Below, piece by piece: positions 8,552-61,316 of a DNA stretch of 64,000 nucleotides. The translations under genes were made by a program, and so were the position numbers. Under the pieces are notes generated by a model, which ran no database searches, was not told the origin of the DNA, and saw only the letters and a list, made by a program, of their open reading frames with translations. Numbering within the stretch: the stretch's first letter is position 1; the number at the start of each line of letters is the position of its first letter. The DNA comes from Stegostoma tigrinum (taxonomy: Eukaryota): NCBI RefSeq assembly GCF_030684315.1, contig NC_081369.1, forward strand, positions 9,834,035 to 9,898,034, given 5' to 3'.

Positions 8552-9089
8552 ATTTCTATCAGGGTTTGCGACCAATCCCTCCCTGCAAAACTGCAGTTGA
8601 AAGAAGAAACCACGCTGTGTTGCCCATTGGCCCTCTTTCTTGAGGTTCATCGATGGTGTCATGGTGAAGATGAGTTCCTGAAGAAGCGAACAAGGAACAA
8701 CGGAGGGAATGTATGAAGTTTTCAGCATTTCTCAAGAAACAACGCCATCCCCCAATGCGTCTACATTCAGCTGTCCAATTTCTCAGATTTCTTCAGAGAT
8801 AGTAGGAACTGCCGATGCTGGAGAATCTGAGATAACAAGGTGTAGAGCTGGATGAACACAGCAGGCCTAGCAGCATCAGAGGAGCAGGAAAGCTGACGTT
8901 TCGGGCCTAGACCCTTCTTCAGAAATCTTTTGAAGAATTCTGAACCAATTCGGAAGAAGGGTCTAGGCCCGAAACATCAGCTTTCCTGCTCCTCTGATGC
9001 TGCTAGGCCTGCTGTGTTCATCTAGCTGTGCACCTTGGTATCTCAGATTTCCTTTCAGACTTCTGCCAAAGACAGTTACAACTTTGAAG
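8552..9089 (+). pseudogene. Decayed paralogue: 5' half of a V exon fused to 3' half of a C1 exon, interrupted by an insertion
   Basis: 8570-8680 reads DQSL..TTLCC..EVHRWCHGEDEFL (cf. EVFWWRRNEESFL). 8694-8791 plus 9052-9089 read GTTEGMYEVFSISQETTPSPNASTFSCPISQISFQTSAKDSYNFE-G|GT (cf. KTVDGLYEATSSLEEAQPVQSGVVYSCLISHECLKAPVSVSYTFNR-G|GT). Confidence 0.7.
8792..9040. repeat. Inverted (hairpin) dimer of the Penelope terminal unit
   Basis: Left arm is the reverse complement of the right arm; flanked by TCTCAGATTTC at 8781-8791 and 9041-9051. Confidence 0.85.
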
Positions 9090-30982: not shown

Positions 30983-31019
30983 CCAATATGCCGCAACAGT
31001 CAAGTGATAAGTTACGTCA
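30983..31019 (+). promoter_or_regulatory. Candidate proximal promoter motifs (CCAAT, GATA, CRE-like)
   Basis: CCAAT 30983-30987, TGATAA 31005-31010, TTACGTCA 31012-31019, 120-160 nt upstream of the ATG; motif matches only. Confidence 0.3.
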
Positions 31020-31139
31020 CAGTCTCACGTTTAACCCACATATTTAGCACTGAAACTCATTTGACCCAACCCAAACCAAAACCAGTCAGAATTCTGCCGT
31101 CGTTGACAGCAAGGAGCTCACTCTCTAATTGTTTGCAAG

Positions 31140-31194
31140 ATGTTATTGAGACCAGTGGTTCTGTTCATGGCTCTTCCGGTTATGACTTGGCCAG
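31140..31194 (+). CDS. IgSF receptor exon 1: signal peptide (MLLRPVVLFMALPVMTWP)
   Basis: ATG at 31140, hydrophobic 18-codon leader, phase-1 donor CAG|GTACTC at 31194/31195; joins in frame to the V exon. Confidence 0.8.
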
Positions 31195-31408
31195 GTACTC
31201 TTAAATGCTACGAAGTGCCCTCTTCGTGTAATTTAGACTGTGTTTCATATTCACAGCTACTGTGCGTTGCAATGTTAGATGCTATGCTTCTCTAATCCGA
31301 TGCGCGTAATTGTTCTCAAAAGTTTCTTCTATTTTAGCCCTCCTTTGTTTTATTTACTTTGTAGTCTGCAGCTATTATTACAATTCCTACTTGTTTTATT
31401 TTTAATAG

Positions 31409-31714
31409 TCACGAAAGTAACTTCGAGCAAAGTAGAACAGTTTCCCAAACACGTAAAGTCGGCCAAAGGTGACAACGTTTCCATGTTCTGCACATTTCCC
31501 ATATCTGAAACTGTTCCTGAAGTATTTTGGTGGAGACGCAATGAGGAATCTTTTCTGGAACCCGACAACAGAAAGCGATTTCATGTCCAGAAAGGAAGCG
31601 GATCACTTCATATCATCAATGTCACTGTTGCAGACTCCGGAATGTATTATTGCAAAATAAAACATCAGCAAACTCTCATTGGAGATGGAAGTGGCTCGAC
31701 GCTGACAGTGTGCG
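31409..31714 (+). CDS. IgSF receptor exon 2: V-set domain with integral J-like G strand
   Basis: Acceptor TTTTATTTTTAATAG and donor G|GTAAGT; 306 nt, phase 1-1. Encodes VEQFP..GDNVSMFC..EVFWWR..GSLHIINVTVADSGMYYC..IGDGSGSTLTVC (B-strand Cys, C-strand Trp, DxGxYxC, GxGxxLTV). Confidence 0.95.
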
Positions 31715-32288
31715 GTAAGTGACACTTGCAGGGGCAGACAACTCTTCAGCTGCTTCGTGTAATTTATGTGGCCTGAGGCTTTATAATTCGATGAAAATCC
31801 AATGATAGCGTATTCACTTCACACCTTCAGGGGCAAATCTTTCCAGCTTTATAGCTTCGCTATACAACGGACTTTGATTCGCTTTCGCCCGTTTTGCGCC
31901 TTTTCTAAAGATCAATTCGACCGCTCATTGCGATCATGACCCTGCACAGTGCCGTTCATGCAGTGAGTGCAGAAACGGTTGCTATAGCGTCAAGGTAGTG
32001 AAACAGAACAACTGTTCAAATCCTACGGCGAAATTAATTGATGAAATACCATGAAATAAAGAACTGCGAATGCTAGAAATCTGAAAGGAAAAGAAATTGC
32101 TGGAGAAATTCAGAATGCCTGGCCCCATCTGTGTGAGTTACGTTTCGAGTCCAGTGATCCTTCTTCAGAAGGGCTCTGAACAAAGGTCCCTGGGCTCGAA
32201 ATATCAGCGGCCTTTTCGCTTCACAGATAGCCTCAAAATAAGGGGGCGGGATTTCGTTCAGTGTCGAGGAAGGATTTCTTCATTCGAA

Positions 32289-32850
32289 GAACAAAGAACA
32301 AAGAAAATTACAGCACAGGAACAGGCTCTTCGTCCCTCCAAGTCTGCAACAATGCAGATCTTCCGTCTAAACCTGTTATCTATTTCCTAAGGCTCTGTAT
32401 CCCTTTGCTCCCTGCCCATCCATGTACCTGTCCAGATACATCTTCGAAGACACTATCGTGTCTGCGTCTAACACCTCCGCTGGCAAGGCGTTCCAGGCAC
32501 CCACCACCCTCTGCGTAAAGAACTTTCCACGCATATCTCCTCTAAACTTTCCTCCTCTCACTTTGAACTCATGACCCCTGGTAATTGAGCCCCCACTCTG
32601 GGGTAAAAAAAGCTTCTTGCTATCCACCTTGTCTATACCCCTCATGATTTTATAGACCTCAATCAGGCCCCCCGTCAATCTCCGTCTTTCTAATGAAAAT
32701 AATCCTAAACTACTCAACCTTTATTCATAGCTAGCGCCCTCCATACCAGGCAATATCCTGGTGAATCTTTTCTGCACCCTCTCCAAAGCGTCCACATCCT
32801 TTTGGTAATGTGGCCACCAGAACTGCGCGCACTACTCTAAACGTGGCCGA
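32289..32850 (-). mobile_element. CR1-type LINE 3' end in intron 2
   Basis: LGLFSLERRRLTGGLIEVYKIMRG..FFTQRVVGAWNALP; GAACAAA tail repeats. Confidence 0.9.
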
Positions 32851-34913
32851 AGAGTTGCGAATCTGTGGAATTCCCTACCCAATGAAGCAGTTAAGGCGTC
32901 ACCGTTAAATGTTATTCAGGCACAGAACGATTTTTGAACAGTATAGGAATTAAGGATTATGGTGAGTGAGCGGTAAGTGGACCTCAGTCGGCCATGATAT
33001 TATTGAATGGCGGAGGTGCCTCAACGGGCTAAATATTCCTATTTCTTATAGTCTTACGTTATTACGTTCCGATGCTGCCAAACCTGCAGAGTTTCTCCAG
33101 CAATTTCTGTTTTTGTGTCATGGCGGAAATTCTCGGTTTACCACTAATCGAAGTAATGGTGCTAAAATGCGAGATTGGAAACAATATTGATAGAAAATCA
33201 AAGTGCTATGGATAGTGGATGTTTGGAATACGAGTACAAATGACTTGAAACGTGTCTGAACATCGACAGAGGCAGTGCGAGCATAAGAATTAGAACACAA
33301 GCCATTCGTTCCTCAACTCTACTCAGCCACTCAATAACATTTTGCCTGATCTGATTGTAGTCAAACGGCGTTTTCCTATCCACCGCGATACCCCTGGATG
33401 CCCTAGTTAATCAAAAACACAATTAACATTTCAGGTCACAATCTTTCTTGAGAACAATTATAACACGTCCCACATTATTTTTATAACAGATTATAAATGC
33501 CGTCCTAATAGGCATCTCCAACATGCATTCACTTTCAATTTAGGTGAATGATATAATACCACAGCAAGTAATATCCCACCAACACAGAGTAAATTTTCAA
33601 CGTGTCAATTGCCGATCGAACCGTTCTAGGCCAAATTGTCCAAACTTTGAGATGCATATGAAGGGAAATTAATCCTGTGGATCAAGGGAATAGAATAAAA
33701 CTGGACAAACTGAGTTGAGTTACAGTACAACCATAACCGAAGTAAATGGCAGAGTAAGTCGTGGTGGTGTGGATTTGATGGACCAAATGTCCTTCTTCAA
33801 CACTGTAGGGATTCTGCAGTTCGATTAAAGAAATGCAAAGCGCTTCGGCTGCACATTTTTTCCAATACTAAGATGCTCGAAACGCTAACTTTAAAAAAAC
33901 GCAAATGAATCGCATGATCCTATAAGAGGGAAATCTTTGATCTTGCCCTTAACATTAGATTCTATCCCCAGTCGTGAGGCTTACAGGACAGTGAAGATAC
34001 CCATTTCGTCTGTGGTTCGCCACACGGACTTTCTGTGATGCATGCACAACTGGGATAGTGAATGAAGGACTGTACCAAGCATACACAAAGACCTTTCTGG
34101 TGTCCTGTGTTTGTGATTTATTTTTCCGATGCAGCGTGATTCGCCACCGGAGACCAAGATAACACTTTTTTTTGTCTAAATGGGATTTCTGTAATATCTA
34201 AAGCAGATCGGCGGGGAAAATTGAAACATTCTCTACCTTTGACGGCAATAAAACCTTGAAACAAATATGGAAATGAATAAAATATCTCACTCAAAATCAA
34301 GCACCATAAACAAGCCGAGAAGGCATGCTAAGGATATTTGAAATAATAAGTAGCAGAACAATACAAACCCAGGATCATTACTTCCAGCTAAGTATGGAGG
34401 GCGGATCGAGAGGGTGCAAGTTTATTTTAGTAATTTGTTAAGGTGGCATTGATATTTCGTTGGGATGTGGGTAGTTCAGGCGAAGGCGGAAATACGAATC
34501 GATTGTTGGATCATGCTCAAAGTGTCGAATAGCCTTTCCATCGGAATGGCCTAGTTCGGCTCCTAATTCCCCTGTTTCCACCAGGGAGAATCTCCTCCAG
34601 GGAAAGGAAAAACAAACATGCCCAACAAATGAATGCACTTTCAGATGGACAAATCCCTTGGAATTATTTTAAATGTTGCACTTTACCAAAGATTTTCCGC
34701 CCGGGTTCATCCTTGCTGTGCATTGTTTGGAAAACATCCTAACATTATGCGGTGTACTTTTAAAAATAAATGCAAAGACCAAGGTCAAAATCGATAACAA
34801 GGAAAATTGTTGTCGCATCATGAATAAAGTGAGATGGGATGGGGATGCGGACGGAGTGGACAGGAGGAAACAAAAGGGATGTTGGTTAATTAAAAAAAAA
34901 CTTTCTGTTATAG

Positions 34914-35210
34914 TTCCCCCGACCGACTTGAAAATCGTTCTCGTTGAAGGAACTTCAGGGAATTACATGAAATTCGAGTGCAAAACGACCGCCTTTTACC
35001 CTGAGGATGCACGAATCTCCTGGCAAAAAGATGGTGTTAAAATTCAGGCTGGAACAGAAACTGTGGAAAACAAGACAGTGGATGGTCTCTATGAAGCTAC
35101 TAGTTCGTTGGAAGAAGCACAGCCGGTGCAAAGCGGTGTAGTTTATAGCTGCCTGATATCTCACGAATGTCTTAAGGCGCCCGTCAGCGTCAGCTACACT
35201 TTTAATCGAG
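34914..35210 (+). CDS. IgSF receptor exon 3: C1-set domain
   Basis: Acceptor CTTTCTGTTATAG and donor G|GTAAGA; 297 nt, phase 1-1. Encodes VPPTDLKI..FECKTTAFYPEDARISWQKDG..DGLYEATSSL..YSCLISHECL (C..FYP..W and YxCxxxH C1 signatures). Confidence 0.95.
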
Positions 35211-36306
35211 GTAAGATTGAACATGTTCCCAAAATGGCGTTTGGGTCCGTGATGGCGGCGGGAGGGCAGTGGGGTAGGAAAGAACTTAAACGTGTATTTT
35301 TAAGGGTGTCCGGTGTTCATTCACAATGCCACAGAAATGGAAACAAAACAAAATATTTTAAGGTCGCTTGGGGATACCGGAGGGTGAATCGATCTCTGGA
35401 TGACCTGAAATGGGAGGTTGATGGGAAAACTGCTCAAACTTTGATAAATCGACAATGTTTAATTGCTGAGTGAAATGAAAGTTCAGATTAAATTGATCCA
35501 TTCCGCCTAAGTACCTTTTACAAGCTGTACACGTATATTGTCTATCCTGTACAGCTAACCTCCGCCAACAACGCCTTCAATTGTCTTTATCCTAAACTTG
35601 GAAAATTCCGGCCTCTCCGTATACCGCTGTGGCTTTCTTTGTTTAAGACGCTTCTTCATCCTTAATTCTGCCTCTCCTAGGACTACTTTATGTATGGCTG
35701 ATAATGCTCTGTGAAGTGTCTTAGAATTATTTTTAACACGGCTGAAGGAACAGTATAACTGCAAATTGATACTGTTACAGGTACTAAAATTTGCAGTCGG
35801 TGTTGTCCGGGAAGGCTGGAGAAGGGCGTCATAAAGCGTACAAAATCCTCTCAGGTCTTGCCAGGCTACATAAGGAAAGGATAGTCTCCTGGTTGATGGT
35901 TTGGAATCTGAAAAAGAATAGTTTCAAAATAAGGGGCAGGTCATTTATTACTGAGGTGAAGACGAATTTCGTGAACCATAAACTTGGGAATTCAGAATCT
36001 CCCTCCCCTGCCCCACGCCGCTCCCTCTCCACAATCCACCACAATGCCGGAAAAGCTGGCCAATCAATTTATAAAATACTGAGATCGACAGATATGCAGA
36101 CGTTAAATGATATGTAAATATTACAAGTCAATAACTGGAAGTTCAACCATGATATAGTCGAACATAGTTGGAGCGTGCTCGAAGATCCCAGTGTTTAACC
36201 CATCCCTGTCGTTATGCTCCTTAGTAACCGCAATTAGGAACAGACAACTTTGCCGGATCTTGCAATTGTTATGCATCTATCTGGTTTAAGACAATGAGTA
36301 AATAAG

Positions 36307-36531
36307 TGCAGAGATAACAAAGTGTGGAACTGGATGAACACAGCAGGCCAAGCAGCATCTTAGGAGCGCAAAAGCTGAGGTTTCGGGCCTAGACCCTTCA
36401 TCAGAAAAGGGGAATGGGGACTTCACCAGAAAAGGGGAATGGGGAGAGGAAGGCTGCTTGGCCTGCTGTGTTCATCCAGCTCCACACTTTGTTATCTCGG
36501 ATTCTCCAGCATCTGCAGTTCGCATTATCTC
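36307..36531. repeat. Inverted dimer of the Penelope terminal unit (intron 3)
   Basis: 12-bp TSD TGAGTAAATAAG at 36295-36306 and 36532-36543. Confidence 0.85.
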
Positions 36532-36845
36532 TGAGTAAATAAGCGTAAATTCCTTTACTCACAGCAAACAACCCTCCTATGCAGCGAGATGTTTCTCTCG
36601 CCTTTAAGTCGTGAAATGTGTCTTCTACATAACATGCATTGCTGAGCTGCTGAGTTGATGTCCACGAATGCACTTTATTGCCCTTGTGTAGTTATTCCTA
36701 TCAAAATTAAAACGCTCCAACTTGGCTAATGGTAGGGTTATCCTGGGAGACATCTTTGTAATTTGTTACCCTGTGCATGATTCTGTGCGCATGTAACTCG
36801 TTGTGTTTCACAATTGTTCACTTCCATCAACTGTTGATCCTGTAG

Positions 36846-36950
36846 GTGAAGACATCAACGTTCCAATGATTGCTGGATGTGCAGGAGGGACATTGGCAAT
36901 GCTGCTATTCATAATATGTTTGATGACATGCAAGTTGAAGGCATGGGCTG
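36846..36950 (+). CDS. IgSF receptor exon 4: transmembrane segment
   Basis: Acceptor ATCCTGTAG and donor G|GTAAGA; 105 nt, phase 1-1. Encodes GEDINVPMIAGCAGGTLAMLLFIICLMTCKLKAWA, an uncharged hydrophobic span followed by KLK. Confidence 0.9.
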
Positions 36951-37349
36951 GTAAGAATCTTTCATATTTGGCTGGGTACATTTTGTTTCCTCAGTTCCAG
37001 CGTAAAAGCATGAAGAGCGTGTGATATATCAAGGGCTGTGACTTTACATTGTGCAAATGAGAACCTAACGCAGATCTGAAATGCAAACATTTCACCTTCT
37101 TATCCGAACTGTACGCTTGGCTTTTTCATGACCATATTGCTACAATCGAAATTATTGTTCAATGCGGATCTAGTTCCTAAACAGGAAAATGTCTGAGTCA
37201 GATATTGACTTTCGGCATTAAAGTGAATGTTTTCGAAATGGCGGCTAGATGCGCATATCTTCAGATTTTATTTCCGATGTATGTTGTGGCGTCAGTGGGC
37301 CGCTGACCCACATTCTGCACTATCACACGGAGATAAACTGTCCATCATT

Positions 37350-38175
37350 TGGTGCAACGCAATGTGAGCAATGAGCTGGTGGAGCTGGTGCGTTTGGCTG
37401 CAAACGTTTCGTCACCCTGCCAGATTATACCGTCAGAGCGCCTCCGCCGAAGAGTCGGGGTTCTGTCCCGATGGTTACTTGTATGCCTCAGTTTGTTGGG
37501 GTGTTTGGTGCCACTTCAGTTTCTCAGTGGTTTGCACACCGGGTCTACTTCAAAGTTTTTGTTGATGGAGTTCTGGTGAGAATACCAGGCCTTGAGGTAT
37601 CCCCTCGGGTGTCTCTCTTTGTCTTGCGCGATTATGGATGTGTTTTCCCCGTCGATCTCGTATCCCTCGTTGTCCGTGTGTAATGAGACAAGTGAGAAGT
37701 ATCACTTGGTGGCTTGAGTATGTGGTCCGTATGTGTGGTCTTTCACATACGCTAGTCTGGAGTTTCCCGTTGTTTTGCGTTCTACCATTGTAGTCAGGAC
37801 GGATAGTCGGTTGTTGTCCTCTTTTTATTGTGTGAATTTTATCCCGGTAAGTAACTTTTTTTACGTGGATGGGTTTTTTTCTAGTTTTGTGCCTTTGATA
37901 ATCTCAAAGGTGTCATCTACGCTTTGCAACTAACATTTAGGTTGTAGCGTGGGGAGCGCTGTCTGTTCGAACATTTTCACGACTGCTTCTGCTATCATTC
38001 CGGATATTGAGGATTCCACTGTTGTGCTGTTGATTTGTTTGTATGTGCCGTCGTTGAAAGTGAAGTGGGTTGTGAGGCACAGATCTCGTAGTTTCATGAT
38101 GCTGTCCTTGTCAATGTTTTTGGCGTCCTGCGGTGCCTGCCTACTTGAATCGTCCGGTAGTGCGGCAGTTGTCAC
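37350..38175 (-). mobile_element. Divergent Penelope-like element fragment in intron 4
   Basis: DLCLTTHFTFNDGTYKQINS..ISGMIAEAVV and a degenerate YVDDTF near 37910-37925; a different subfamily from the others. Confidence 0.75.
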
Positions 38176-38335
38176 TTTGGACAGACGATCTTACTGCAGT
38201 TAATACTGCTGAACACCAGTATACTGTAGATTTCCGTACTAAATTAAGAAAAAAGTTTCTAGCAACGAAGGCATAGCATTAGATTTTCTGATACATTGAT
38301 TGTTATTCACAGTGGATTTCTTTGCTTTCTATTAG

Positions 38336-38379
38336 GCAAACGGATAAATTCGATGGAAACAGGTCAGAATTTCGAGCGG
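38336..38379 (+). CDS. IgSF receptor exon 5: short cytoplasmic exon (GKRINSMETGQNFER)
   Basis: Acceptor TTTCTTTGCTTTCTATTAG and donor CGG|GTAAGG; 44 nt, converts phase 1 to the phase 0 required by exon 6. Confidence 0.7.
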
Positions 38380-39329
38380 GTAAGGCGACATTATTCTTTT
38401 CATTCCTAACAAAAATGGTAGAGGAGGTGGACTCATGGGAAGGATAGTAACGGATTTTATATTCATTCGAAATTATTTAGAATTCATAGAGCACAGAATT
38501 CTGCAGCAAGGGATGCATCGCCTGCGCCTCTGCCGCCTCTGTGAGATGTGTCAATTTGTTCCACTTTCACGTTATTTAGCTGCTTGTCTGATTTTTTTGT
38601 TTCAATCTAATTCCCTTTTGAAAGTTCCAATCGAATCTCTTTCTGTCACTTTCTGTTGATAGACAGCTTACTGCAACGGGGGTGTAGAAAAAGACTCTTC
38701 CCAGACGACAAGGGACCCTTCCAGCAAATCTCTTGTTATACGCCCTCGAAAACCTTGATACCTGCAAAACGTAGTGCCTGCAGTGAATGGTTTATAAGAT
38801 CTCAGCTCTTTCTGTGCTGTATGCTGGCTGCAGTGCGTGTCGGGACTGGGGGCTGGGTAGGAGCAGATGGATGCAATAATGGGTGTGGATATGTTAGAGT
38901 GTCAGGAGGAGAGTTTTTGTCAGGAATTGTTGGTCGCCACTTGGTGGATATAACTTTACAGAAGTGTAACGAGAACAGACTAACGCTTCTCTGTCAGCTC
39001 TTCTATTAGATTTGGCTAACTGCGGAAAAAGAAAACTAGCGTCGCCACAACAACGGCCAAGAGAGTTAGAGATAAATGAGGAAATAATAAATACCTATTT
39101 TTCATTGGCTAAATGTTAGAATGTGGGTAAATACATTAAACGCTCTGCGTTTCATACTTAGCACATTACTCCACACCACATTCGTGACATATTGGGCGCA
39201 AATCATTGAGAATTATCAGACTAAAATTGCGACATTGATTGTCTACTGTCTGCATATTTATCTTCTCAGGTTCAATTCCAATCGATGATGTTTGGCTAAA
39301 AAAAAAATCAAATTCGCTGCTGTTATAGC

Positions 39330-39800
39330 CATGGAGTCACACAACCCGGAAAGAGACCCTTCAGACCAACCAGTCCATGCCAAACGCATTCCTAAACTGA
39401 TCTCCCATCTGCCCTCTCCAGGCCCATATCCCTCCAAACATACTCTATTCATGTACTTATCCGTTGCCATTGTACCCACATTCACCACTTCCTCAGGTAT
39501 TTCATTCCACACGTAAACGATCCTCTTTGGAAATAAACGGCCTCCACTTTATTTTTACATTTCTTTCCTCTCGCCTTAACATGCCCCCGCGGTCTTGATT
39601 TCCCCTCTCCAGGAAGATGACAACTATAATTAACTCCATCTATGCACCTCATTATTTTATAGACTTCTATAAGGTCGCCGCTGAACCTTTTGTGCTCCAC
39701 TGTAAAACAAATCCCAGCCGAGCCACTTTTCTTTATAACTCAAACCATCCATGCCCAGCAATATACTGGTAAATCTCTTCTGAACCTTGTCCAGCTTTAA
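39330..39800 (-). mobile_element. CR1-type LINE 3' end abutting the exon 6 acceptor
   Basis: KLDKVQKRFTSILLGM, GDLIEVYKIMR, WNEIPEEVV. Confidence 0.85.
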
Positions 39801-39824
39801 ATATTTCATTTTTGTTTTCACTAG

Positions 39825-39935
39825 CTTAGACATGAAAGAACTGAAGAAAATGTCGCCTATGCTACCGTAAACTTGACAGATGACAAGGGTAAATCCAAAC
39901 ACGGGCTCAAAGAAGAACACATTGTCTATTACCAG
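39825..39935 (+). CDS. IgSF receptor exon 6: cytoplasmic, ITIM VAYATV plus IVYYQ
   Basis: Acceptor TTTTTGTTTTCACTAG and donor CAG|GTAAGA; 111 nt, phase 0-0. Encodes LRHERTEENVAYATVNLTDDKGKSKHGLKEEHIVYYQ. Confidence 0.85.
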
Positions 39936-40689
39936 GTAAGATGGAGAATTGTGAAATATGAAATATCCATGTTACACCCATCTGAGGTCAACACTGCAAC
40001 AATAGAGTTCTTTTTTTAAAGGCACTGTACAGTGTGAACGCAAGAACTTTTTTCATGTGTTATGGAGCAGGGCGTGCAGTGGTAATTCAGATGCCAAGGT
40101 TAAAAAAATGAGGACACAACCAGGTCAAGTAGAGCTAGAGATAAATGAGGAAATAATAAATATCTATTTTTCATTGGCTAGATGTTAACATGTCGTTGAA
40201 TGCATTAAACGCACTGGATTTCATATTTAGGACATTACTCCATACCACTGGAGCAGCTAATGAAACTTTATCGGAATCAATAGACTTGGAATGTAAAGCT
40301 GGCCTCAGCAGCGCTGATCATGCGAACTGTCATCAATTGTATCAGGGAAAAAAAAATACAGGGCATTGGTGAGAACACATTCGAAGTATTGTGTACATTA
40401 CTGGTCACACTCTTGATGGAAAGATATTAATTCATACAAAGCAGTGCAGAGAAGCTTTACTAGACTAATACCTGGAATGAGTAGATTCTATTACGTGACC
40501 TTACAATGATACGACATGAGTGTGCCAGTGGGCTTCAGGGAACAAAAACGACCATCCTTATCTGGTCTGCACCACATGTGAGCGCAGAGCCACAGCAACG
40601 TGATTGACTCTCAACTGCAATCTGGGCAGTTCGGGATGGGAAATGACTGCTGACCTAACCAGTAATGCTCACATATTTTGAATGAATTA

Positions 40690-43310
40690 ACAAAATAGAA
40701 TAAAGGAGTTTAGACTATCGAGCCTGCTGTACCAGTCCAACGAGTCCGCTCGAGTCCACCGAGATCAAAACTAATCTGACAAACCTCTGCTTCACTTTCC
40801 TGCTTCTTCTCTGTAACACTTTATTTCTTTACTATCTGGAACCACAGAAAACCATAGAGTCATAGAGCCAGACAGCCCGGAAACAAACCCTTTGGTCCAA
40901 CCAGTCCATGCCAAACATAATCCCGAATGAAACTAGTCCCAACTACCTGTTCCTGGCCTATATCCCTCCAAAACATTCCTGTTCACATATCCATGGAATT
41001 TCTTTTAAGCTTTGTAATTGTACCTGCATCCATCACTTTACCATGAAGTTGATTACACACGCGAAGCATCCTCTATGTAATAAACAATGCCACATATATT
41101 TTTAAGACTCCCTCCTCTCACCTTGAAAAAATTGCCCGCATTCTTGAAATCCCCCATCTCAGGAAAAAAAAACTGCCATCACCTCTATGTATACCTTTCA
41201 TTATTTCAAAAACCTCTATTAGTTCACCTCTCAACCTCGTCTGCTCCAGTGGAAAAAAAACATGTCCCAGCTTATCCATCCTTTCCTTACAATGCAAGTC
41301 AACCAATTTAGGCTTGACTATTCTGAAACTCTTAACTAAGACAATCTTTTGTCAGAAATAACTTGACAGATTCACTATCCTCTCGAAGAAAATACATCCT
41401 CATCTGTTTTAAATATGCAACCATTTATTCTGAGATTATGCCCTCTAGATCTGGGCTCTCTCGCAGAGGATGCAATATCTCCATGCCTATTGTCAAGTTC
41501 CCTACAGATGTTATGTGTTTCAATGAGGTTGCCTCTCCTTCTTCAATGAGACCAGGGCCAGCCTCCTCAACCTCTCCTCATAAGAGAGTTCCATAAGAGA
41601 AGAACCTTGTCTGCACTGCCTCTAATATCAGTATATGTCTTCTGAAATCGGGGAAGGAAACAGCTCACAATATTCAGCTATGGCCTAACTAGTACCTCGT
41701 ATACGTTTGGCCTACTTGTATACCCTATTCCCTTTGAAATAAGTCCCACATTTCATTTGCTTTCTCTGATACGTACTCAAATTATGTGCAAGCAATGTTT
41801 TGTGATTCATGCATGAGCAATCCCAAATCCCTCAGCTCCATGGCTTTATGACATCCTGCACTTACATAACATTCAGCTCCTCTACTCCTCCTGCCAAAAT
41901 GCATAATCTCACATTTCCACATTATACTCCATCTGCTAACTCTTTGCCAATTCATGTGTCCTCCCTGTACCCTTCTAAAAACTTTTTGTGTCATTCTCAT
42001 AACTCTGTATGTCACCTACTTTAATGTTATCCATGAACTGGCTGTTGTGCATACACTTTCTGCATCCAAGGCTTCCATATATATGTGTGGAATAAAATAT
42101 GGCCCTAGCACTAGTCCTATTTTCAATTCACAAATTCCATATTTATATTCTGAAAATGCTCTACCCCCATCCCAACTCTCAGTGTTTTATTCATTAATCA
42201 GTCCTCTAACCACATTAATGTACTACCTCCAAGGCCATGGATTTTTACCTTTTAAGTAGCCTAATGTGTGGTACCTTAGCAAATGCCTTCTGAAAATCCA
42301 AATATACTACATCCACTACTTGTCCTTTATCTGTTCTCATATTTACCCCACCACTGAATTCTAATAAAATTATAAGGCATAATTACCCCTGCATGAAGCC
42401 ATGCTAACTGTCCTATTTCTAAATACTTTACAACAAACTGAAGAATTCCGTCCAAAATGGATAATCAGCTAACAGGCCTGTATTTGCATCTTACTGTCTC
42501 CTGCCCTTGCAGATAAGGATGTTGGTTTGGCAAATTTATAACCCTCTGGGAGTCTTTTATTTCAAAATCTAAGCACTTCTAGATTACTACTGGTGCATCC
42601 AGTCTTCTGGTTACTTTCTGTGATATCCTAGAATGCATCCCATCAGGTCCAACATACCTATTAGACTTATGCTCCATCAGCTCATACCCCCCACCCCGAC
42701 AAATGTTTTCTCCAGTGAGAATTATATTTGTTTCATCTCCTCCTTATGTCCTTGAATATCTAATAATTTGGTAAGCTATTAGTGTCTTCTACTCTGAAAA
42801 CTAATTCAAAGTAGTCATTCAACACCTCTACTGTTTCCTGGTTCCCCATTATTCTTCACCTTATTTTTGACTTCTGTCTTCATTTTTGTAGGCTATAAGC
42901 CATAGGATAGGTATCCTCTTGAGCTTAGAAGATTCGGAAGCTACCTAGTCGAAACATACATGATCCTGGCAGACTTGGCCAGGTGGATGTTGAAAGGTTC
43001 ATTCCTTTTTTTGGAGAATCTCAAACTAGAGCTCACAGTTTAAAAATGAGGGACTGTCTATTTAATACAGGGTGAGGGTTATTTCTTTCTCTCATGGGGT
43101 TATGAGTCTTTGGAACTTCCTTCCTTAAAAGTAGATGCAGAAAATTTATTTTTTTTTAAGGCAAGGGTAGATAGCTTCCTGATTACCACGCAGATGAAAG
43201 ACTAGCGGGGTTGATGAGGGGCAGCGGTGCAGAAACGTGGAGTTGAGTATACTACAAATCAGCCATGATCTTATTGAACGAAGGTGTGAGCTTTTGAAGG
43301 GTTGAGTCGT
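40690..43310. mobile_element. Cluster of decayed CR1-type LINE pieces in intron 6 (mostly - strand; + strand piece at about 42900-43310)
   Basis: RLRGELIEVFEIMKG, KCEIMHFGRR and related RT 3' motifs. Confidence 0.7.
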
Positions 43311-44207
43311 CTGCACATATTACTTGTTTGCATGTTGCAGGAAATCTGCTGCTATGTTATTACCTGCCCGACATATGATCCTAGATTTCCAGCCACGTGG
43401 TTGATTTTTAACAACTAAAGCAAATGGCTTAGCAAGGTACTCAGCTCAAGACAATTAGCAATGAGCAACAAATACTGATATTCTTGCTGACATCCTAATT
43501 GGATGACAAAAATGCAAAATAAGGCCACTGTTCGGAAATCAAAACTTCCCTACTGATTTGGTTGGAAAAAGAAATCACGGCAGATGTAAAATGGGCAGCA
43601 AGCATTTACAGACAAAGTACCACACTGAGAACAATTTGCCTTATTCCTGCCTCGTTGACTCCAGCACCAGGAAAAAACAAAAACAAACCCAGGCAGGCAG
43701 GGGAGAGTACTGCCTATGATCACGTGCAACTTTACCACTTACTGTAATACCTTCCATGTTACCTGTACTGCACTAAACTACAGGAATTGAAAGGTCTTTT
43801 GTTTAAGCTGCCAACTGTACTGTGTTGGATCATCTCAACCAATGGTCACTGTATTCACCTAGAGTTCCAGGGATCGTAAGATCAGCTGAGGTGGTGTAAA
43901 AAGACAGTTGGAAACTTTGACTTGAGGCCTCTCCATGGGATAAGCAGATCAAATTGGTGGTCATGTCTCAGAATTTGGGGCTTGAAAGGGATGTTTTGCA
44001 ATATCAGCATTCCAAACACAGTTAACATGCTGGCATTTTATAGTTTTACTGTTTTAAATGAAGTAATTGCCTGTTCACCTAAATGGGAAATATTGATATT
44101 CTAATCCATTTTGAGAGAAGTACATACCAGAGTACCAAGAATTTTTATGGCAAGGCTACAGAGTCGAGAGAAGTCAAAGTTAGAAAACAATACAATCTGA
44201 AATTGGT

Positions 44208-44422
44208 GAGATAACAAGGTGTAGAGCTGAATGAACACAGCAGGCCAAGCAGCATCAGAGGACCAGGAAGGCTGACGTTTCGGGCCTAGACCCGAAGAAG
44301 GGTCTAGGCCCGAAAAGTCAGCCTCCCTGCTCCTCTAATGCTGCTTGGCCTGCTGTGATCATTCAGCTCTACATCTTGTTATCTCAGATTCTCCAGCATC
44401 TGCAGTTCCTACTGTCTCTGAA
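44208..44422. repeat. Inverted dimer of the Penelope terminal unit (intron 6, about 120 nt before exon 7)
   Basis: 16-bp TSD ACAATCTGAAATTGGT at 44192-44207 and 44423-44438. Confidence 0.9.
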
Positions 44423-44545
44423 ACAATCTGAAATTGGTAACTGATGACAGGAAATTTCACTAAAGCCTTTAAAATAAAACATTGACTGCCTTTGGCAATG
44501 AATGGACGAAAGACTAATTTGTGGTGCAAAATTTTGCCTTCACAG

Positions 44546-44686
44546 ACCAAGCAAGAAAACGAAAATAATAAGATGACTTACGCTAACCTGCAATTAGCTG
44601 CTTCCAAGAAAGCATCAAAACCCAAACAGCAGGACAGTTCTGCAGTATATGCAGAAGTAAAGGTGACAAAGAAAGCGAGAACCTAA
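44546..44686 (+). CDS. IgSF receptor exon 7: terminal cytoplasmic exon with MTYANL and AVYAEV motifs
   Basis: Acceptor TTTTGCCTTCACAG, phase 0. Encodes TKQENENNKMTYANLQLAASKKASKPKQQDSSAVYAEVKVTKKART, then TAA. Confidence 0.85.
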   Translation, partial: TKQENENNKMTYANLQLAASKKASKPKQQDSSAVYAEVKVTKKART

Positions 44687-45317
44687 AACGCTAAATACAT
44701 CAGGAAGATGGAAATATTAATGAATGCAGGTCCAGAACATTTTGTTGCGCATCATAAAACGCGCTTCTATCACTATTATCATTCATTACAGTCAGGCTAA
44801 GAACGAGCTATCTGGAATATCTGCGTCTATTAGGAAATGCTACATGGAAGAATTGTTGGCCAGTTCATTACAAAACCCATTCAATGTGACAAGTTGAAAA
44901 CTAATTTCAGACCAAGAGTTCTGGTTTTTGAACGCCCACTTTTATTGTGCGTGTCGACATTAACATTTAGTTTGTACCTAGTTTCATGAAGACAATTTAC
45001 ATTACTTTGGGGGACTGGCTACTGTTGGAACCAAAAGTAGTAATTCACTAAACACGATTTCCTATATGGTCTTCTTGGTCATGGGATAGGCAGGCAAGAG
45101 GAATGCCACTGCATTCAAAACTCCACAACTGACCCTGAAACCGTTTTCTTTAGTTCTTCAAGCTTAGTGCCTTCCATTTACAATAGTGAAACACCAAGCT
45201 CAACAGGCGCAGGGATACAATTAAATTCCACTCTTCAGGCGAAAAAATTACTAGAATGCACCAGCATCCGAGCTTTGATGCGGCCTGCGCTTCCGCGAGG
45301 AGTTCCAACAATTCATC

Positions 45318-56171: not shown

Positions 56172-56465
56172 TGCCCAAGCCAGTTGAAAATTATCCCCAT
56201 TACAAGGTTCTCAGTGGCTTCTCCAAAATTCGAGTGGAGAACAATTGCCTTTTATCCGGAGGATGTTGGAGTCCCCCGATAAGGGATGGTGTCTCAATCC
56301 TGGCCAGAATAAAATCTGTGAAAAACAAAACCGTGGCTCGGCTGTGTGAGGTGTCTAGTTCATTGGAAGAAGCATAGCCCGTATGGAGTAGAGTAGTTTC
56401 TACCCGCTAGGCATCTCATGTCTGTCTTAAGGTGCCTGCCAGTGTCAGCTACACCATCAGTAATT
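56172..56465 (+). pseudogene. Decayed paralogue of the C1 exon
   Basis: Colinear DNA similarity to 34914-35210 (AAATTCGAGTG, GCCTTTTA.CC.GAGGATG, TAGTTC.TTGGAAGAAGCA, TGTCTTAAGG.GCC, GTCAGCTACAC). AG/GTAAGAT ends kept; frameshifts, in-frame stops, and both canonical Cys lost (TGG, CGC). Confidence 0.9.
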
Positions 56466-58170: not shown

Positions 58171-61100
58171 GGTCCCCGCGATCCCTGCTGTCCCTGGACA
58201 GAATCCAAAACCTCATAAAATAGCGCTAGCTCCAAACGTAGATGATTTTGGTAGTGAATTACGTCTTTGCAGGTGCTGAAATGGTGCTTATTTTGCAGCG
58301 CATATTGTTCGTCTATTATGTAAATGCATTATCAGCAATGTAAATTTGGCCTTCTTGAAATCAGCGTGTTAAGTGACCTATTTCACTTCCATGAACGAAT
58401 CCACGTTGCATCCAATGGCTACTCCTTGCATACATCTATTTTATAAGCTTGTTTTAATTCTACACTGCAGAGAACAGTTTCTATGTAATTGCGATTGCGC
58501 GATTTCCTCTGGGTTCCATCATAATTCTTGGATTGACATGCGTTATTCCGGATCATGGAAAAACAGTTTCAACAGAAGCTGAGTGAACACTTTTCTAACT
58601 TGTAAAATTTCCCCTAATTTTTCAATCAACCGGCTCAGAAATGTTATTTCACACCTTTGACACACGTGTGACTAGGGACAGCACAACTTTTAACTCAGTA
58701 GGCCACATTCGAAGCAAGCTCGCAGGTAGCATAAGTAAGCTGCGATGGGAAAATGTGCTTCTGTAAAAAGTACAGTTTTAGAAATTGACATATATGATTA
58801 ATTGCTTGCTACCAAGTGCTTTCAGCCTGAAAAGTTGATATTCCTGCTACTCCAAAACTGTGCTTTCCCAGCATCACAACATTCGACTCTGGCTTCCAGC
58901 ATCTGCAGTCCTTATGTTCTCCAAGTCAAAGATGATTTAGATATGAGCCTTTATATTTAGCTTGGATGGTAAGATGCCGAATGAAATGTTAACTGTTTCT
59001 CTTTGCAGAGGTGGTAAATATATCCAACGTGTTTGCTTTCGTTTCAGATTTTATTAATTTCAACACTAAGTAAACTTTATCACAAGATAGGTAATAACAG
59101 AATGGAGTGCAATTGTGCGCTTTGGCTTAGTTGGGGCTTCTTTTAATAGAAACGTGTTTTTCAAGTTCTCATTTGATCAAACGGACTTGAGCACAAAATT
59201 TGCACAATGTCAACTAAACGTACTACCAGTCAATCGAGTATCTAAAATCTTCCATCGAGGTTTTTTTCTGCTCTGTGGAATGAATAGAAAATTGGGCGCA
59301 AGGGTTCTATTCGTAGTACTGACCGTTTGTGTACCAAGAATGTACCTCAACCAAACTTCTTTATTTATTTCACTGTTGTTTGCCATGGCCAATGATCCTT
59401 TTCATCTGATAAGTACTATTTGAACTTCCGTGACCAGAAAATTCATTGTTTCAATTCTTTCTTTAAAAAAAGGTTTGTGTGAATGGTTGTATAATCCATC
59501 AGATATGTACTATTTTCCCAGTGCCCTTTGACATTATTCCCTCAATCGCGACGAAAATTGCAAAGATAGTCAACTGGAAGAAGCACTTAATGCGATAGAC
59601 TTCTAACACATTCTCAAGAGATAGCTGTGGCTGGGTATGCTGGAATAACCCATCACGAATTAACCTGTGGGAGGAGGCTGGGAAGCGATTTTCTGAAAAG
59701 CAGTAGCCTTTGCTGTTTGAGGATACCCAATGTACTGTTATGAATGCAGTTCTGGGATACTCAGCTGTTTTTGTGATGCTAGCTTCATAGGGTTCTCCTC
59801 GTATTCCTTTAAGACATGGATACTAGGTGTGGTGCTGTCATGTTTTATTTCTTGTGAACTGTTGGGGTTTAGTGGAAAAGTAAAGATTGGCATATATTAA
59901 ACTGTTGACCTCCAGTACAATTTAAGTAGGGGTCTCTAGATATTGGTCAGAGCAGAACAAAATCCTCATTGCTTACGCATGACAGCTTTGCATAATACTA
60001 TCCTGCACTCTCTGACAGCTCGGGTCAGTTTTAACTTTTTCTATGCAGCTGAATTGATGACATCACAGGAGGATCAGCATAAATTACCACCCTGCTTTGG
60101 AAGTGTATATAGTTTTTCCTTCACTATCGAATGGTCAAATTCCTATACCACTTTTCCAACTAGCAGTATAGGCATACCTAAACCAATTGGATTACAGTGG
60201 TTTAATAGGCGTCACACGACTCAAGAACAATTGGAGATGCGTAGTAAATGCCAGGGAAGCCCAGGTCGCCTGAGCAATTTCTTTTCGAAAAAGTGGAAAA
60301 TGTCATATAGCATTTTCTGACATGTATGGCTCGCTGCTATCCCATCGATTCCTGAAAATATGGCTGTATTTTAAGTGAAAATGTCAGTATTTTTCGGCGT
60401 AACACTATGTTGAATGCAGAAAATACCGACGTTTATGTTACAGTTTGGATTTTTATACATATCTTCAGGGGGAAAATCTGCTTTTTCTTGTGAAGGGGTT
60501 AAATGTCAGGGGATAGAGATTTTCGGTGATGGTTAGGCAATTAAAAGAGACACGAGGGAAGATTTTTTTCCCCCTGAGAGGATGACCTGGATCTAGAATT
60601 CGCATTCAAAATTTGCTGCTTGAGGCAGAAAAAACTCGATTCATTTGAAACGAACGTGAACTTTCAACTGAAGCACTACAATGTTTCATTTTGCTGCTTG
60701 CTGCTGGGAAGTGCGTTTAAAATGACTGACTAGTTTTTCTTTCGATCACTGCAGACACGATCGTCTGATAGGCCAGTTCTGAAGAAGAATCGTACTGAAC
60801 TGGTAAGTTAAGTTCTGTATCTCTCTCCAGTTTCTGCTGAGTTTCTTCATCGCTATATTGTGTTTGTTACACAGACACAATAATCTTGACTCTAAGAGGA
60901 TTCTAAAAATGACAGTTGTGACAAATATAAGCTTAGGAAGCTAATTTTGTATGGCAAGTTAGAGTGTATTTATTTAAGATCAAGTCTTCAGTCCTAGTTC
61001 CACCAAATTTATTGACAGTTTAATAATTATTGTCATGTCAATGGAATGCTATTATTGTTGAAAGTCCCTCCATTTTAATGTTACCTTGATTATGAGCCAG

Positions 61101-61173: not shown

Positions 61174-61316
61174 NNNNNNNNNNNNNNNNNNNNNNNNNNN
61201 NNNNNNNNNNNNNNNNNNNNNNNNNNNNNNNNNNNNNNNNNNNNNNNNNNNNNNNNNNNNNNNNNNNNNNNNNNNNNNNNNNNNNNNNNNNNNNNNNNNN
61301 NNNNNNNNNNNNNNNN
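61174..61316. other. Assembly gap (143 N)
   Basis: Run of N. Confidence 1.

What the first reader, a model, noticed from the sequence alone, without database searches (positions are those of the whole stretch)
31140..44686. Intact non-rearranging VJ-C1-TM receptor with a SIRP-alpha-like four-tyrosine inhibitory tail
Seen: seven exons with GT-AG ends and compatible phases (1,1,1,1,0,0) splice to 1059 nt, i.e. 352 aa plus stop. The V domain carries its J-like strand (IGDGSGSTLTV) in the same exon with no RSS, followed by one C1 domain. Known: V(J) plus C1 is the architecture of antigen-receptor chains; C1 domains are otherwise largely limited to MHC, beta2m, tapasin and SIRP-type proteins; mammalian SIRP-alpha is V-C1-C1 with four Tyr motifs. 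Inference: a single-C1, TCR-chain-shaped but inhibitory receptor in a probable cartilaginous fish, relevant to the ancestry of rearranging receptors and possibly an uncharacterised family.
Basis: partly seen in the sequence, partly recalled or inferred. Interest (0 to 1): 0.9.

Follow-up and report, generated by a model that had tools for sequence, protein, structure and literature searches.

The report
Shark SIRP-like V-C1 inhibitory receptor gene
This is an intact shark gene for a cell-surface immune receptor with one antibody-like variable domain, one constant domain and an inhibitory-type tail; it belongs to a large, unstudied shark, ray and chimaera family that resembles mammalian SIRP-alpha.

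Summary
Seven open exons with GT/AG ends and phases 1,1,1,1,0,0 sum to 1059 nt. They encode leader, V-set domain with an in-exon J-like strand, one C1-set domain, an uncharged membrane anchor and a tail with four tyrosines.

No second C1 exon lies inside the gene. In a related species, an RNA-like contig joins the C1 exon directly to the anchor exon at the predicted junction. No RNA of the source animal was available.

The gene is not unique. It belongs to a family of at least 43 named proteins from 15 shark, ray and chimaera species. Pipelines name them inconsistently: SIRP-alpha-like, B7-H6-like, tapasin-related-like, Ig-lambda-like. I found no paper describing the family.

The family includes activating-type partners with a charged anchor. 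A decayed one lies 11 kb downstream in this window.

SIRP-alpha is nominally the nearest solved protein, only just ahead of Ig light chains, so orthology is unresolved.

Earlier notes of this scan report the same family on other DNA of this genome.

Verdict: a real gene and a new variant of a known kind, not a new kind of antigen receptor.

The parts
31140..31194 (+). Exon 1: start codon and hydrophobic leader (MLLRPVVLFMALPVMTWP), donor GTACTC, phase 1
   Evidence: 50% identical over 18 residues to the N-terminus of Heterodontus P0152. X1 and X3 contigs give depth in this bin.
31409..31714 (+). Exon 2: V-set domain with DSGMYYC and an in-exon J-like strand GDGSGSTLTV; phase 1 to 1
   Evidence: Pfam V-set 2.6e-11. 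AlphaFold model pLDDT 91.6 with no C'' strand. Best folds are shark VNAR and TCR V-alpha, with SIRP-alpha V at rank 37. Contigs of three runs of a relative start or stop at the exon borders.
34914..35210 (+). Exon 3: the single C1-set domain (FYP, 13 residues from Cys to Trp, C-L-I-S-H); phase 1 to 1
   Evidence: Pfam C1-set 7.9e-10. Model pLDDT 89.7. All listed Foldseek matches are Ig light-chain constant or MHC class II beta-2 domains. The hallmark criteria come from PMC2785349.
36846..36950 (+). Exon 4: short stalk, uncharged transmembrane helix (VPMIAGCAGGTLAMLLFIICLMTC) and KLK stop-transfer; phase 1 to 1, so skipping it keeps the frame
   Evidence: X1 record 7 runs from 35208 straight to 36844-36951, which is the e3-e4 splice. 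Isoforms without this exon are annotated in Heterodontus (P0161), Narcine (P0052) and Callorhinchus (P0185).
38336..38379 (+). Exon 5: juxtamembrane linker (KRINSMETGQNFER); phase 1 to 0
   Evidence: It aligns to P0001 residues 343-352 and abuts the e6 match at 353|354. Not tested with reads.
39825..39935 (+). Exon 6: first tyrosine pair, VAYATV(NL) and IVYYQT, with 22 residues between the tyrosines
   Evidence: Not tested with reads.
44546..44686 (+). Exon 7: second tyrosine pair, MTYANL and AVYAEV, with 22 residues between them; stop TAA at 44684-44686
   Evidence: 62-67% identical to the C-termini of P0001 and P0152. Not tested with reads.
45220..45225 (+). First ATTAAA after the stop; a possible polyadenylation signal (weak)
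   Evidence: A motif match only.
56175..56461 (+). Context: decayed paralogous C1 exon with two in-frame stops, one frameshift and the B-strand Cys lost
   Evidence: tblastn E 1e-16. 72% DNA identity to exon 3 over 230 nt. Its flanks resemble the intron ends of the intact gene, so it is a genomic duplicate and not a retrocopy.
58471..58586 (+). Context: open terminal exon of activating type (anchor with Arg and Asp, nine-residue tail, TGA), preceded by AG
   Evidence: tblastn E 5e-5 to the C-terminus of Scyliorhinus P0037. Sequence read.

Best explanation
An intact seven-exon gene for a type I membrane receptor. It is the inhibitory-type member of a V(J)-C1 paired-receptor family found across cartilaginous fishes, and its closest known analogue is SIRP-alpha.

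Proposed working:
- The membrane-distal V domain binds an unknown ligand. It is antigen-receptor-like, lacks a C'' strand and carries a J-like G strand.
- The single C1 domain acts as a spacer.
- The anchor has no charged residue, so no ITAM adaptor is recruited.
- The 115-residue tail carries two exon-encoded modules. Each has two tyrosines 23 positions apart.
- After phosphorylation, each module would dock the tandem SH2 domains of an SHP-1/SHP-2-type phosphatase and damp activation.
- Skipping the in-frame anchor exon could give a soluble form.

Shown here: gene structure, domain identities, family membership, conservation of the four tyrosines, and use of the V-exon borders and the C1-to-anchor splice in a relative's transcripts.

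Inferred: phosphorylation, phosphatase recruitment, inhibitory outcome, the ligand, and expression in this animal.
For: - Gene model.
- Domains: Pfam, C1 hallmarks (against criteria), confident models and fold matches.
- Family: the nearest protein is the Chiloscyllium plagiosum model P0001, 80% identical in V and 76% in C1. The profile search returned 45 hits: 43 named chondrichthyan, 1 unnamed and 1 medaka.
- Tree: the V tree places the window with P0001 at 100/98 support, inside a shark clade sister to a ray clade.
- Exon borders fall where the homologues are continuous.
- Tail: of 27 family tails of 60 or more residues, out of 45 proteins examined, 25 have an xTYAxL-type motif, 20 have YxQ[T/A/N], and 19 have both that and at least two ITIM/ITSM-like motifs under a relaxed pattern. 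Chimaera members are included.
- The SIRP-alpha peptide printed in PMC5589908 has ITYADLNL..KGKK..TEYASIQT with 23 residues between the tyrosines. That paper uses it as a bis-phosphotyrosine docking peptide in its SHP-2/SHP-1 sensor constructs. The window has 22 residues between the tyrosines in each module.
- Paired partners: 5 of the 45 proteins have Arg and Asp in the anchor and short tails. Scyliorhinus P0166 and P0167 are nearly identical through the ectodomain and then diverge.
- Transcripts: in runs X1-X3 of a relative, depth falls on the exons and is zero in most non-repeat intron bins. X1 record 7 joins 35208 to 36844. Three contigs begin or end at 31407 and one at 31713.
Against: - No RNA run of the source organism was on offer, so expression here is unshown.
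- The runs of the relative are only guessed to be RNA. Their contigs are 88-95% identical to the window and may come from a paralogue.
- Junctions e4-e5, e5-e6 and e6-e7 rest on homology alone.
- Only VAYATV is a canonical ITIM. MTYANL and AVYAEV have Met and Ala at position -2, and IVYYQT has no hydrophobic residue at +3.
- The neighbouring family remnants in the window are decayed, so the cluster does lose genes.
- No phosphatase, kinase or ligand was examined.
Confidence: 0.65

Rival explanations
1. It is a true SIRP: a co-orthologue of the tetrapod SIRP genes descended from one gene of the jawed-vertebrate ancestor. The single C1 would then be either the primitive state or a loss.
For: - SIRP-alpha (2wng) is the best non-titin PDB match of the natural homologue P0152 (44 bits). 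It ranks 7th for the family profile (95 bits).
- The two nearest ESM Atlas clusters for P0152 are SHPS-1-like and SIRP-alpha, both at 0.96.
- The tail motifs, the 'YxxLNL...KK' context and the Tyr spacing resemble the SIRP-alpha peptide.
- Inhibitory and activating forms are paired, as with SIRP-alpha and SIRP-beta.
Against: - The margin over Ig light chains is tiny (44 against 41.8 bits; about 82 bits for light chains with one C domain fewer).
- The window's V and C1 exons searched alone do not list SIRP among their best 60 PDB matches.
- Pipelines give the family five unrelated names.
- No bony-vertebrate SIRP appeared in the family searches. Those searches are limited by a word index and missed even known members.
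- The tail alone gave no Atlas hit.
Confidence: 0.35
2. It belongs to a chondrichthyan-specific family that arose independently from an Ig/TCR-like V-C1 gene. On this reading it converged on ITIM-type tails and paired activating forms, as KIR, LILR or teleost NITR did.
For: - 43 of the 45 hits in the profile search are named chondrichthyan proteins; the other two are one unnamed ENA protein and one medaka protein at E 3.5e-5.
- The C1 exon's best PDB matches are UrIg2 and Ig constant domains.
- The V model's best folds are shark VNAR and TCR V-alpha.
- The architecture is V-C1, not V-C1-C1.
Against: - The resemblance to the SIRP-alpha tail goes beyond a bare ITIM. It includes the Tyr pair spacing and the LNL and KK context.
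- SIRP is the nominal best match for the whole protein.
Confidence: 0.3
3. It is an intact-looking but silent or dying copy in a gene cluster with high turnover.
For: No RNA of this species was available. Family relics lie at 8.6, 56.2 and 58.5 kb. The protein was not returned from the 5.8-billion-protein collection in the one search made with it.
Against: All seven exons are open, all twelve splice sites are canonical, and every invariant family residue is kept: C27, W40, D75, Y79, C81 and G95 in V, and C22, W36, C79 and H83 in C1. The tail is 62-67% identical to homologues from another shark order. A 95%-identical V-exon transcript contig exists in a relative.
Confidence: 0.15
4. One reading: a relic close to the non-rearranging V(J)-C1 precursor of antigen receptors.
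For: It has a single-exon VJ, a true C1, a V fold nearest to VNAR and TCR V-alpha, and a C1 fold nearest to the Ig light-chain constant domain. The family dates at least to the shark-chimaera split.
Against: - The same features hold for SIRP, which Hatherley et al. could not place before or after the antigen receptors (PMC2785349).
- UrIg and UrIg2, linked to the MHC and to the Ig/TCR complex, are the published candidates (PMC12227049).
- No linkage to the MHC or to antigen-receptor loci was tested here.
Confidence: 0.08

Closest known systems
SIRP-alpha / SIRP family (mammals, chicken, Anolis)
   Same: - N-terminal V-set domain with a J-like strand, followed by C1-set domain(s).
- Single-pass anchor.
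- Four tail tyrosines arranged as two pairs, with an xTYAxL motif and about 23 residues between the paired tyrosines.
- Family partners with a charged anchor and a short tail.
- Nominal best whole-protein match.
   Different: - One C1 domain, not two.
- The V domain lacks a C'' strand and folds more like VNAR.
- Only one canonical ITIM.
- The ectodomain is no closer to SIRP than to Ig light chains.
- The activating partners carry Arg and Asp in the anchor. A single Lys is what I recall for SIRP-beta.
- Ligand unknown; synteny untested.
UrIg / UrIg2 (non-rearranging shark Ig; PDB 9dmx)
   Same: A non-rearranging single-exon VJ domain followed by C1-type domains, in elasmobranchs. It is the top PDB match of the window's C1 exon.
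   Different: UrIg2 is V-C1-C2-C3 (PDB title) and forms homodimers with an Fc-like C2-C3 (abstract). The window gene has one C1, an anchor and a tyrosine tail.
TCR and Ig light chains
   Same: V-J-C1 domain order. The V and C1 folds match these best.
   Different: V and J lie in one exon without an RSS. The anchor is uncharged and the signalling tail is long.
Teleost NITRs (recalled, not tested here)
   Same: Germline V(J) domains on ITIM-bearing or charged-anchor receptors, in large clusters.
   Different: As I recall, NITRs lack a C1 domain. No sequence comparison was made.

Membership tests
SIRP family | N-terminal V-set domain with DxGxYxC and a J-like G strand | tested here: met
   DSGMYYC and GxGSxLxV are present. 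Pfam V-set hit. Model and fold matches. The motif definition comes from PMC2785349.
SIRP family | Two membrane-proximal C1-set domains (V-C1-C1) | tested here: not met
   One C1 exon only. A relative's contig splices C1 directly to the anchor exon. Most family members are V-C1. The bamboo-shark model P0001 has two near-identical C1 copies.
SIRP family | C1-set hallmarks: (F/Y)(F/Y/H)P, 13 residues from Cys to Trp, xVxH after the F-strand Cys | tested here: met
   FYP is present, C22 to W36 gives 13 residues between them, and C-L-I-S-H follows the F-strand Cys. All listed Foldseek matches are C1 domains.
SIRP family | Tail with four tyrosines in ITIM-type motifs arranged as two docking pairs | tested here: inconclusive
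   Four tyrosines in two exon modules with 22 residues between them. One ITIM is canonical, two fit a relaxed pattern and one does not fit. The resemblance to the peptide in PMC5589908 was judged by eye.
SIRP family | Groups with bony-vertebrate SIRPs to the exclusion of Ig/TCR and other V-C1 proteins | tested here: inconclusive
   SIRP-alpha scores 44 bits against 41.8 for light chains. The profile search ranks it 7th. The Atlas top clusters are SIRP. The single exons do not list SIRP in their best 60 matches. No SIRP sequences were on hand for a tree.
SIRP family | Location in the conserved SIRP gene neighbourhood | not tested
The window holds no single-copy neighbour gene. Earlier notes hold none of the seven human neighbour names I recalled.
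SIRP family | Binds CD47 through the V loops; recruits SHP-1/SHP-2 when phosphorylated | not testable with these tools
   Needs binding assays.
Chondrichthyan V-C1 'SHPS-1-like' family (unnamed) | High identity to, and tree placement within, the family | tested here: met
   80% (V) and 76% (C1) identity to P0001, and 60-67% to Scyliorhinus, Heterodontus and Heptranchias members. The V tree gives 100/98 support with P0001 inside a starred 21-row clade.
Chondrichthyan V-C1 'SHPS-1-like' family (unnamed) | Same exon-to-domain layout and conserved four-tyrosine tail | tested here: met
   Exon peptides abut in the homologues. Tail motifs are listed.
Rearranging antigen-receptor chains (TCR, IgL) | Separate V and J segments flanked by recombination signal sequences | tested here: not met
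   V and the J-like strand lie in one exon, with no heptamer or nonamer in or beside it.
Rearranging antigen-receptor chains (TCR, IgL) | Charged anchor residues and a minimal tail (TCR), or a secreted chain (IgL) | tested here: not met
   The anchor is uncharged and the tail is about 115 residues long.
UrIg / UrIg2 | V followed by three C domains, Ig-heavy-chain-like | tested here: not met
   One C1, an anchor and a tyrosine tail. The UrIg2 architecture is taken from the PDB title and from PMC12227049.

The most novel reading that the evidence does not exclude
The family is the cartilaginous-fish branch of the SIRP lineage and keeps its primitive form. That form is one V(J), one C1 and a two-module bis-tyrosine tail, with charged-anchor partners. 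SIRP-type paired receptors would then predate the split of cartilaginous and bony vertebrates, and the second C1 of tetrapod SIRPs would be a later duplication. Earlier notes of this scan describe CD47-like five-pass Ig proteins in the same genome (untested here). Together with these, sharks could carry an expanded 'self-marker and inhibitory receptor' system. That would make the unknown origin of SIRPs (PMC9652883) directly testable.
Probability: 0.3. Interest if true: 0.7.

Novelty: new variant of a known kind. Interest (0 to 1): 0.45.

Why it matters
[quoted passage not shown] The SIRP-alpha structure paper argued that a V plus C1 receptor on myeloid cells may resemble the precursor of antigen receptors (PMC2785349).

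A V(J)-C1 family with SIRP-like bis-tyrosine tails and activating partners, conserved from chimaeras to sharks, is a concrete object on which to test both ideas. The tests are synteny, per-domain trees, phosphatase binding and a ligand search.

This locus adds three things:
- A clean, intact inhibitory member.
- Cross-species splice support for the single-C1 form.
- A decayed activating-type neighbour, showing that paired genes sit side by side and turn over.

On its own it is one more member of a family already visible in databases and already met by this scan.

Tried and rejected
1. Retrocopy idea. tblastn seemed to show V-end, C1 and anchor running on without introns at 56.0-56.5 kb. That would have been a fossil cDNA. 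Three-frame reading showed that the flanks match the intron ends of the intact gene (..LSVIV before the exon, GKIEH.. after it), so it is a genomic duplicate. Rejected.

2. Missed second C1 or extra tail exon. No hit inside the gene with the C1 peptide or with ten family proteins, including Heterodontus P0152, which has an extra 31-residue tyrosine module.

3. Alternative exon 5 donor (38362) and exon 6 acceptor (39829). Rejected because only the 44-nt and 111-nt versions keep the frame and match P0001.

4. Reaching bony-vertebrate relatives. The single-protein and profile searches returned chondrichthyans only, apart from one unnamed ENA protein and one medaka protein at 3.5e-5. The searches missed known members such as P0001 and P0094, so their silence means little.

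5. Tail-only Atlas search: no usable hit.

6. Rfam scan of the window at gathering scores: 0 matches.

7. Column entropy: V 1.79 bits against C1 1.59 bits, with no difference between strands and loops. Uninformative.

8. Literature. Searches for SIRP with shark, ITIM, C1-set, elasmobranch and cartilaginous terms, and for 'signal regulatory protein' with 'sharks', found no paper on shark SIRP-like genes. Searches were badly designed and ranked unrelated papers. Dornburg and Yoder 2022 is not held and may bear on this. No supplement was opened.

Full report
**The observation**

I read 31000-45200 directly and checked the model by script. The seven exons are:
- e1 31140-31194
- e2 31409-31714
- e3 34914-35210
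- e4 36846-36950
- e5 38336-38379
- e6 39825-39935
- e7 44546-44686

Their lengths are 55, 306, 297, 105, 44, 111 and 141 nt, 1059 nt in all. Every donor is GT (five are GTAAG). Every acceptor is AG behind a pyrimidine-rich tract. The phases are 1,1,1,1,0,0.

Each exon is open in the required frame. All searches with window sequence were exon by exon. Whole-protein searches used natural homologues.

The four split codons, read by eye, give Val, Val, Gly and Gly. These match the homologues (..LTVC-V-PP.., ..NR-G-..).

**Domains**

*V domain (exon 2).* It is a V-set domain (Pfam E 2.6e-11). It has the F-strand motif DSGMYYC and a G strand GDGSGSTLTV that fits GxG(S/T)xLxV. In an alignment of 28 sequences the family-invariant residues are G20, C27, W40, D75, Y79, C81 and G95.

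The AlphaFold model built on that alignment is confident (pLDDT 91.6). It shows strands A, A', B, C, a vestigial C', D, E, F and G, with no C''. Its best PDB folds are shark IgNAR variable domains (TM 0.77-0.83) and TCR V-alpha. Ig-beta and SIRP-alpha V follow at ranks 44 and 37.

No RSS heptamer or nonamer lies in or beside the exon. One CACAGTG sits 231 nt into intron 2 without a nonamer, and the window holds 8 such heptamers.

*C1 domain (exon 3).* It is a C1-set domain (E 7.9e-10). It meets the three sequence hallmarks listed by Hatherley et al. (PMC2785349, passages):
- FYP at the start of the BC loop.
- Exactly 13 residues between the B-strand Cys and the C-strand Trp.
- C-L-I-S-H after the F-strand Cys.

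Its model (pLDDT 89.7) matches only C1 domains among the listed hits. These are Ig light-chain constant and MHC class II beta-2 domains, with TM 0.76-0.86.

*Anchor and tail.* Exon 4 encodes an uncharged anchor followed by KLK. Exons 5 to 7 encode about 115 cytoplasmic residues with four tyrosines.

**One C1 or two**

The C1 peptide and ten family proteins find no other C1 exon between 31.1 and 44.7 kb.

Public runs gave further evidence. The runs that hold the V exon are of two organisms:
- B (X4-X7, 2024) matches the window without differences and covers the introns. It is the likely source genome.
- A (X1-X3, 2013 and 2020, 'RNA?' by guess) holds 27-39% of the sampled words.

I laid these on 31100-37000. 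X1-X3 give depth on the exon bins and zero on most non-repeat intron bins.

X1 record 7 (768 nt) lies on 35037-35208 and then directly on 36844-36951. Exon 3 and intron 3 both end in 'ag', so this is the predicted junction 35210|36846. A further 488 nt of the record run on beyond the laid stretch.

X1 record 1, X2 record 8 and X3 record 16 begin or end at 31407, with further letters that do not lie on intron 1. Record 1 also ends at 31713.

So the V-exon borders and a direct C1-to-anchor splice are used in a relative. The caveats:
- These contigs are 88-95% identical to the window and may come from a paralogue.
- The RNA label is a guess.
- No RNA of organism B was offered.
- Junctions 4 to 6 were not covered.

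For junctions 4 to 6, the exon peptides abut exactly in the bamboo-shark protein P0001 (353|354 and 390|391). They align in order in Heterodontus, Mobula and Callorhinchus proteins.

**The family**

A search with the C1 exon returned one protein, P0001 of Chiloscyllium plagiosum. The exon was given inside its surrounding open frame so that full-length proteins passed the length filter. P0001 is named 'tyrosine-protein phosphatase non-receptor type substrate 1-like', that is, SIRP-alpha-like.

P0001 is a flawed automatic model. It reads through intron 1 instead of using a leader exon, lacks the anchor, and has two near-identical C1 copies.

The exhaustive search with the V exon gave 1592 hits. 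Giant multi-Ig proteins headed the list. It also gave a set of single-stretch hits of 40-67% identity, most of them 250-390 residues long. These and two further searches define a family.

The profile search returned 45 hits. Of these, 43 are named proteins of sharks, rays and the chimaera Callorhinchus, 1 is an unnamed ENA protein, and 1 is a medaka protein at E 3.5e-5. Across the named members come from 15 species.

The automatic names are inconsistent:
- SHPS-1-like
- SIRP-beta-1-like
- NCR3LG1 (B7-H6)-like
- tapasin-related-like
- Ig lambda-1 light chain-like
- M1-specific TCR beta chain-like
- HLA-DO-beta-like
- uncharacterized

This is the signature of a family with no curated relative. 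Most full-length members are leader-V-C1-anchor-tail.

In a V-domain tree of 41 rows, the window pairs with P0001 (100/98). The pair sits in a shark clade with Scyliorhinus, Heterodontus and Heptranchias members, next to a ray clade, inside a starred 21-row clade. I dropped the rows whose BLAST match covered under 70% of the V exon.

**Tail and mechanism**

I examined 45 family proteins. In 27 of them, at least 60 residues follow the anchor region. Among those 27:
- 25 have an xTYAxL-type motif.
- 20 have YxQ(T/A/N).
- 19 have both a YxQ(T/A/N) motif and at least two ITIM/ITSM-like motifs. The pattern was relaxed to admit A, P, M and T at position -2.

The usual order is xAYxTL(NL), RTVYAQT, KLTYAAL, then TEYAEL or AVYAEV, in chimaera as well as in sharks and rays. 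The window's VAYATV, IVYYQT, MTYANL and AVYAEV are positional equivalents.

Each coding exon holds one pair, with 22 residues between its tyrosines.

A Nature Communications methods passage prints the SIRP-alpha-derived docking peptide used in its SHP-2 and SHP-1 sensor constructs..ITYADLNLPKGKK..HTEYASIQTS, with 23 residues between the tyrosines (PMC5589908, one passage). A Frontiers paper gives ITYADL and LTYADL as the conserved SIRP-alpha ITIMs (PMC5413580, one passage).

By eye, the family's Y-x-x-L-N-L...K-K context and its spacing resemble this peptide. I did not send the human peptide to any tool, so there is no statistic.

On this basis I propose that each module is a bidentate site for a tandem-SH2 phosphatase. 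This is inference.

**Paired forms**

Five of the 45 proteins carry an anchor with Arg near its outer end and Asp near its inner end, and a short tail: P0037, P0167, P0168, P0177 and P0123. Scyliorhinus P0166 (uncharged anchor) and P0167 (charged anchor) are almost identical through residue 217 and unrelated after it. Such pairs are typical of inhibitory/activating receptor families.

The window holds a remnant of such a partner:
- A C1 exon at 56175-56461 with two stops, a frameshift and the B-strand Cys lost. It is 72% identical in DNA to exon 3.
- Two kb further on, an open terminal exon at 58471-58586. It encodes ..IARFPLGSIIILGLTCVIPDH plus nine residues and a stop, behind an AG.
- No V exon was found for this remnant.

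**Relation to SIRP**

For:
- The homologue P0152 has SIRP-alpha (2wng) as its best PDB match after titin.
- The family profile ranks SIRP-alpha 7th and SIRP-gamma 20th.
- The two nearest ESM Atlas clusters are SIRP (0.96).
- The tail and the paired forms add to this.

Against:
- The margins are small: 44 against 41.8 bits for a light chain. In one search, SIRP-alpha's 95 bits come from three domains, against about 82 for two-domain light chains.
- The window's V and C1 exons searched alone do not show SIRP in their best 60 matches.
- The architecture has one C1.
- I had no bony-vertebrate SIRP sequences for a tree.

I therefore file the gene under the unnamed chondrichthyan family. I call it SIRP-like in working, with SIRP membership undecided.

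**Literature**

- UrIg and UrIg2 are the published non-rearranging VJ-C1 genes of elasmobranchs (PMC12227049, abstract and passages; PMC10751288, passages). Neither text mentions SIRP or ITIM (0 occurrences each).
- A 2022 review says the origins of SIRPs remain unknown (PMC9652883, passage).
- My searches found no paper on shark SIRP-like genes. Subscription journals and supplements were not seen, and Dornburg and Yoder 2022 is not held.

**Earlier notes of this scan**

These are AI notes and serve as leads only.
- They report the same family on other DNA of this genome, 283 kb after and 7.0 and 7.6 Mb before this window, with the same conclusion.
- Notes on other loci of this genome (a different receptor, and CD47-like proteins) call the animal a zebra shark. 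I did not verify the species.
- They also describe CD47-like five-pass Ig proteins in the genome, which I did not test.

**Verdict**

This is a real, intact gene. The family is known to databases but apparently not to the literature. It is a single-C1 variant of the SIRP-type paired receptor design, not a new kind of antigen receptor. Interest is moderate.

Noticed in passing
window 56175-56461 and 58471-58586 (+): Remnant of an activating-type paralogue 11 kb downstream of the intact gene. It consists of a disabled C1 exon plus a still-open terminal exon encoding an Arg/Asp-bearing anchor and a nine-residue tail. No V exon was found for it.
   Followed up: partly
window 8613-8801 (+): A weaker C1-like relic, about 30% identical to family C1 domains (E down to 1.6e-5), with an in-frame stop.
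   Followed up: no
window 30775-30828 (+): A block about 330 nt upstream of the start codon matches residues 7-24 of the bamboo-shark model P0001 at 72%, but contains a stop here. P0001's N-terminus is probably a mis-modelled upstream region plus read-through of intron 1. The match also suggests that the two loci correspond.
   Followed up: partly
window 36222-36615 and 44210-44420: Copies of a palindromic element (..AACACAGCAGGCCAAGCAGCATC.. and its complement). The copy in intron 3 (36222-36615) showed extremely high depth in all four runs laid, of both organisms; the copy in intron 6 lies outside the laid stretch. Rfam found nothing at gathering scores.
   Followed up: partly
window 27081-28013 (-) and 17359-19351 (-): Retroelement reading frames. 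The first has a reverse-transcriptase domain (RVT_1, 3.1e-15). The 362- and 216-residue frames at 17.4-19.4 kb gave no Pfam hit.
   Followed up: partly
window 31711-31713 (Cys codon at the end of the V exon): An unpaired Cys sits at the V-C1 hinge (..TLTVC-V-PP..). It is shared with P0001 and two Callorhinchus members but replaced by Tyr or Phe in most others. It could form an interchain bond. Not examined.
   Followed up: no
window 61174-61316: A run of 143 N (assembly gap or mask). Left untouched.
   Followed up: no
proteins P0161, P0052, P0185 (Heterodontus, Narcine, Callorhinchus): Annotated isoforms that lack only the anchor exon. This fits the phase 1 to 1 symmetry of that exon and suggests soluble forms across the family.
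   Followed up: no
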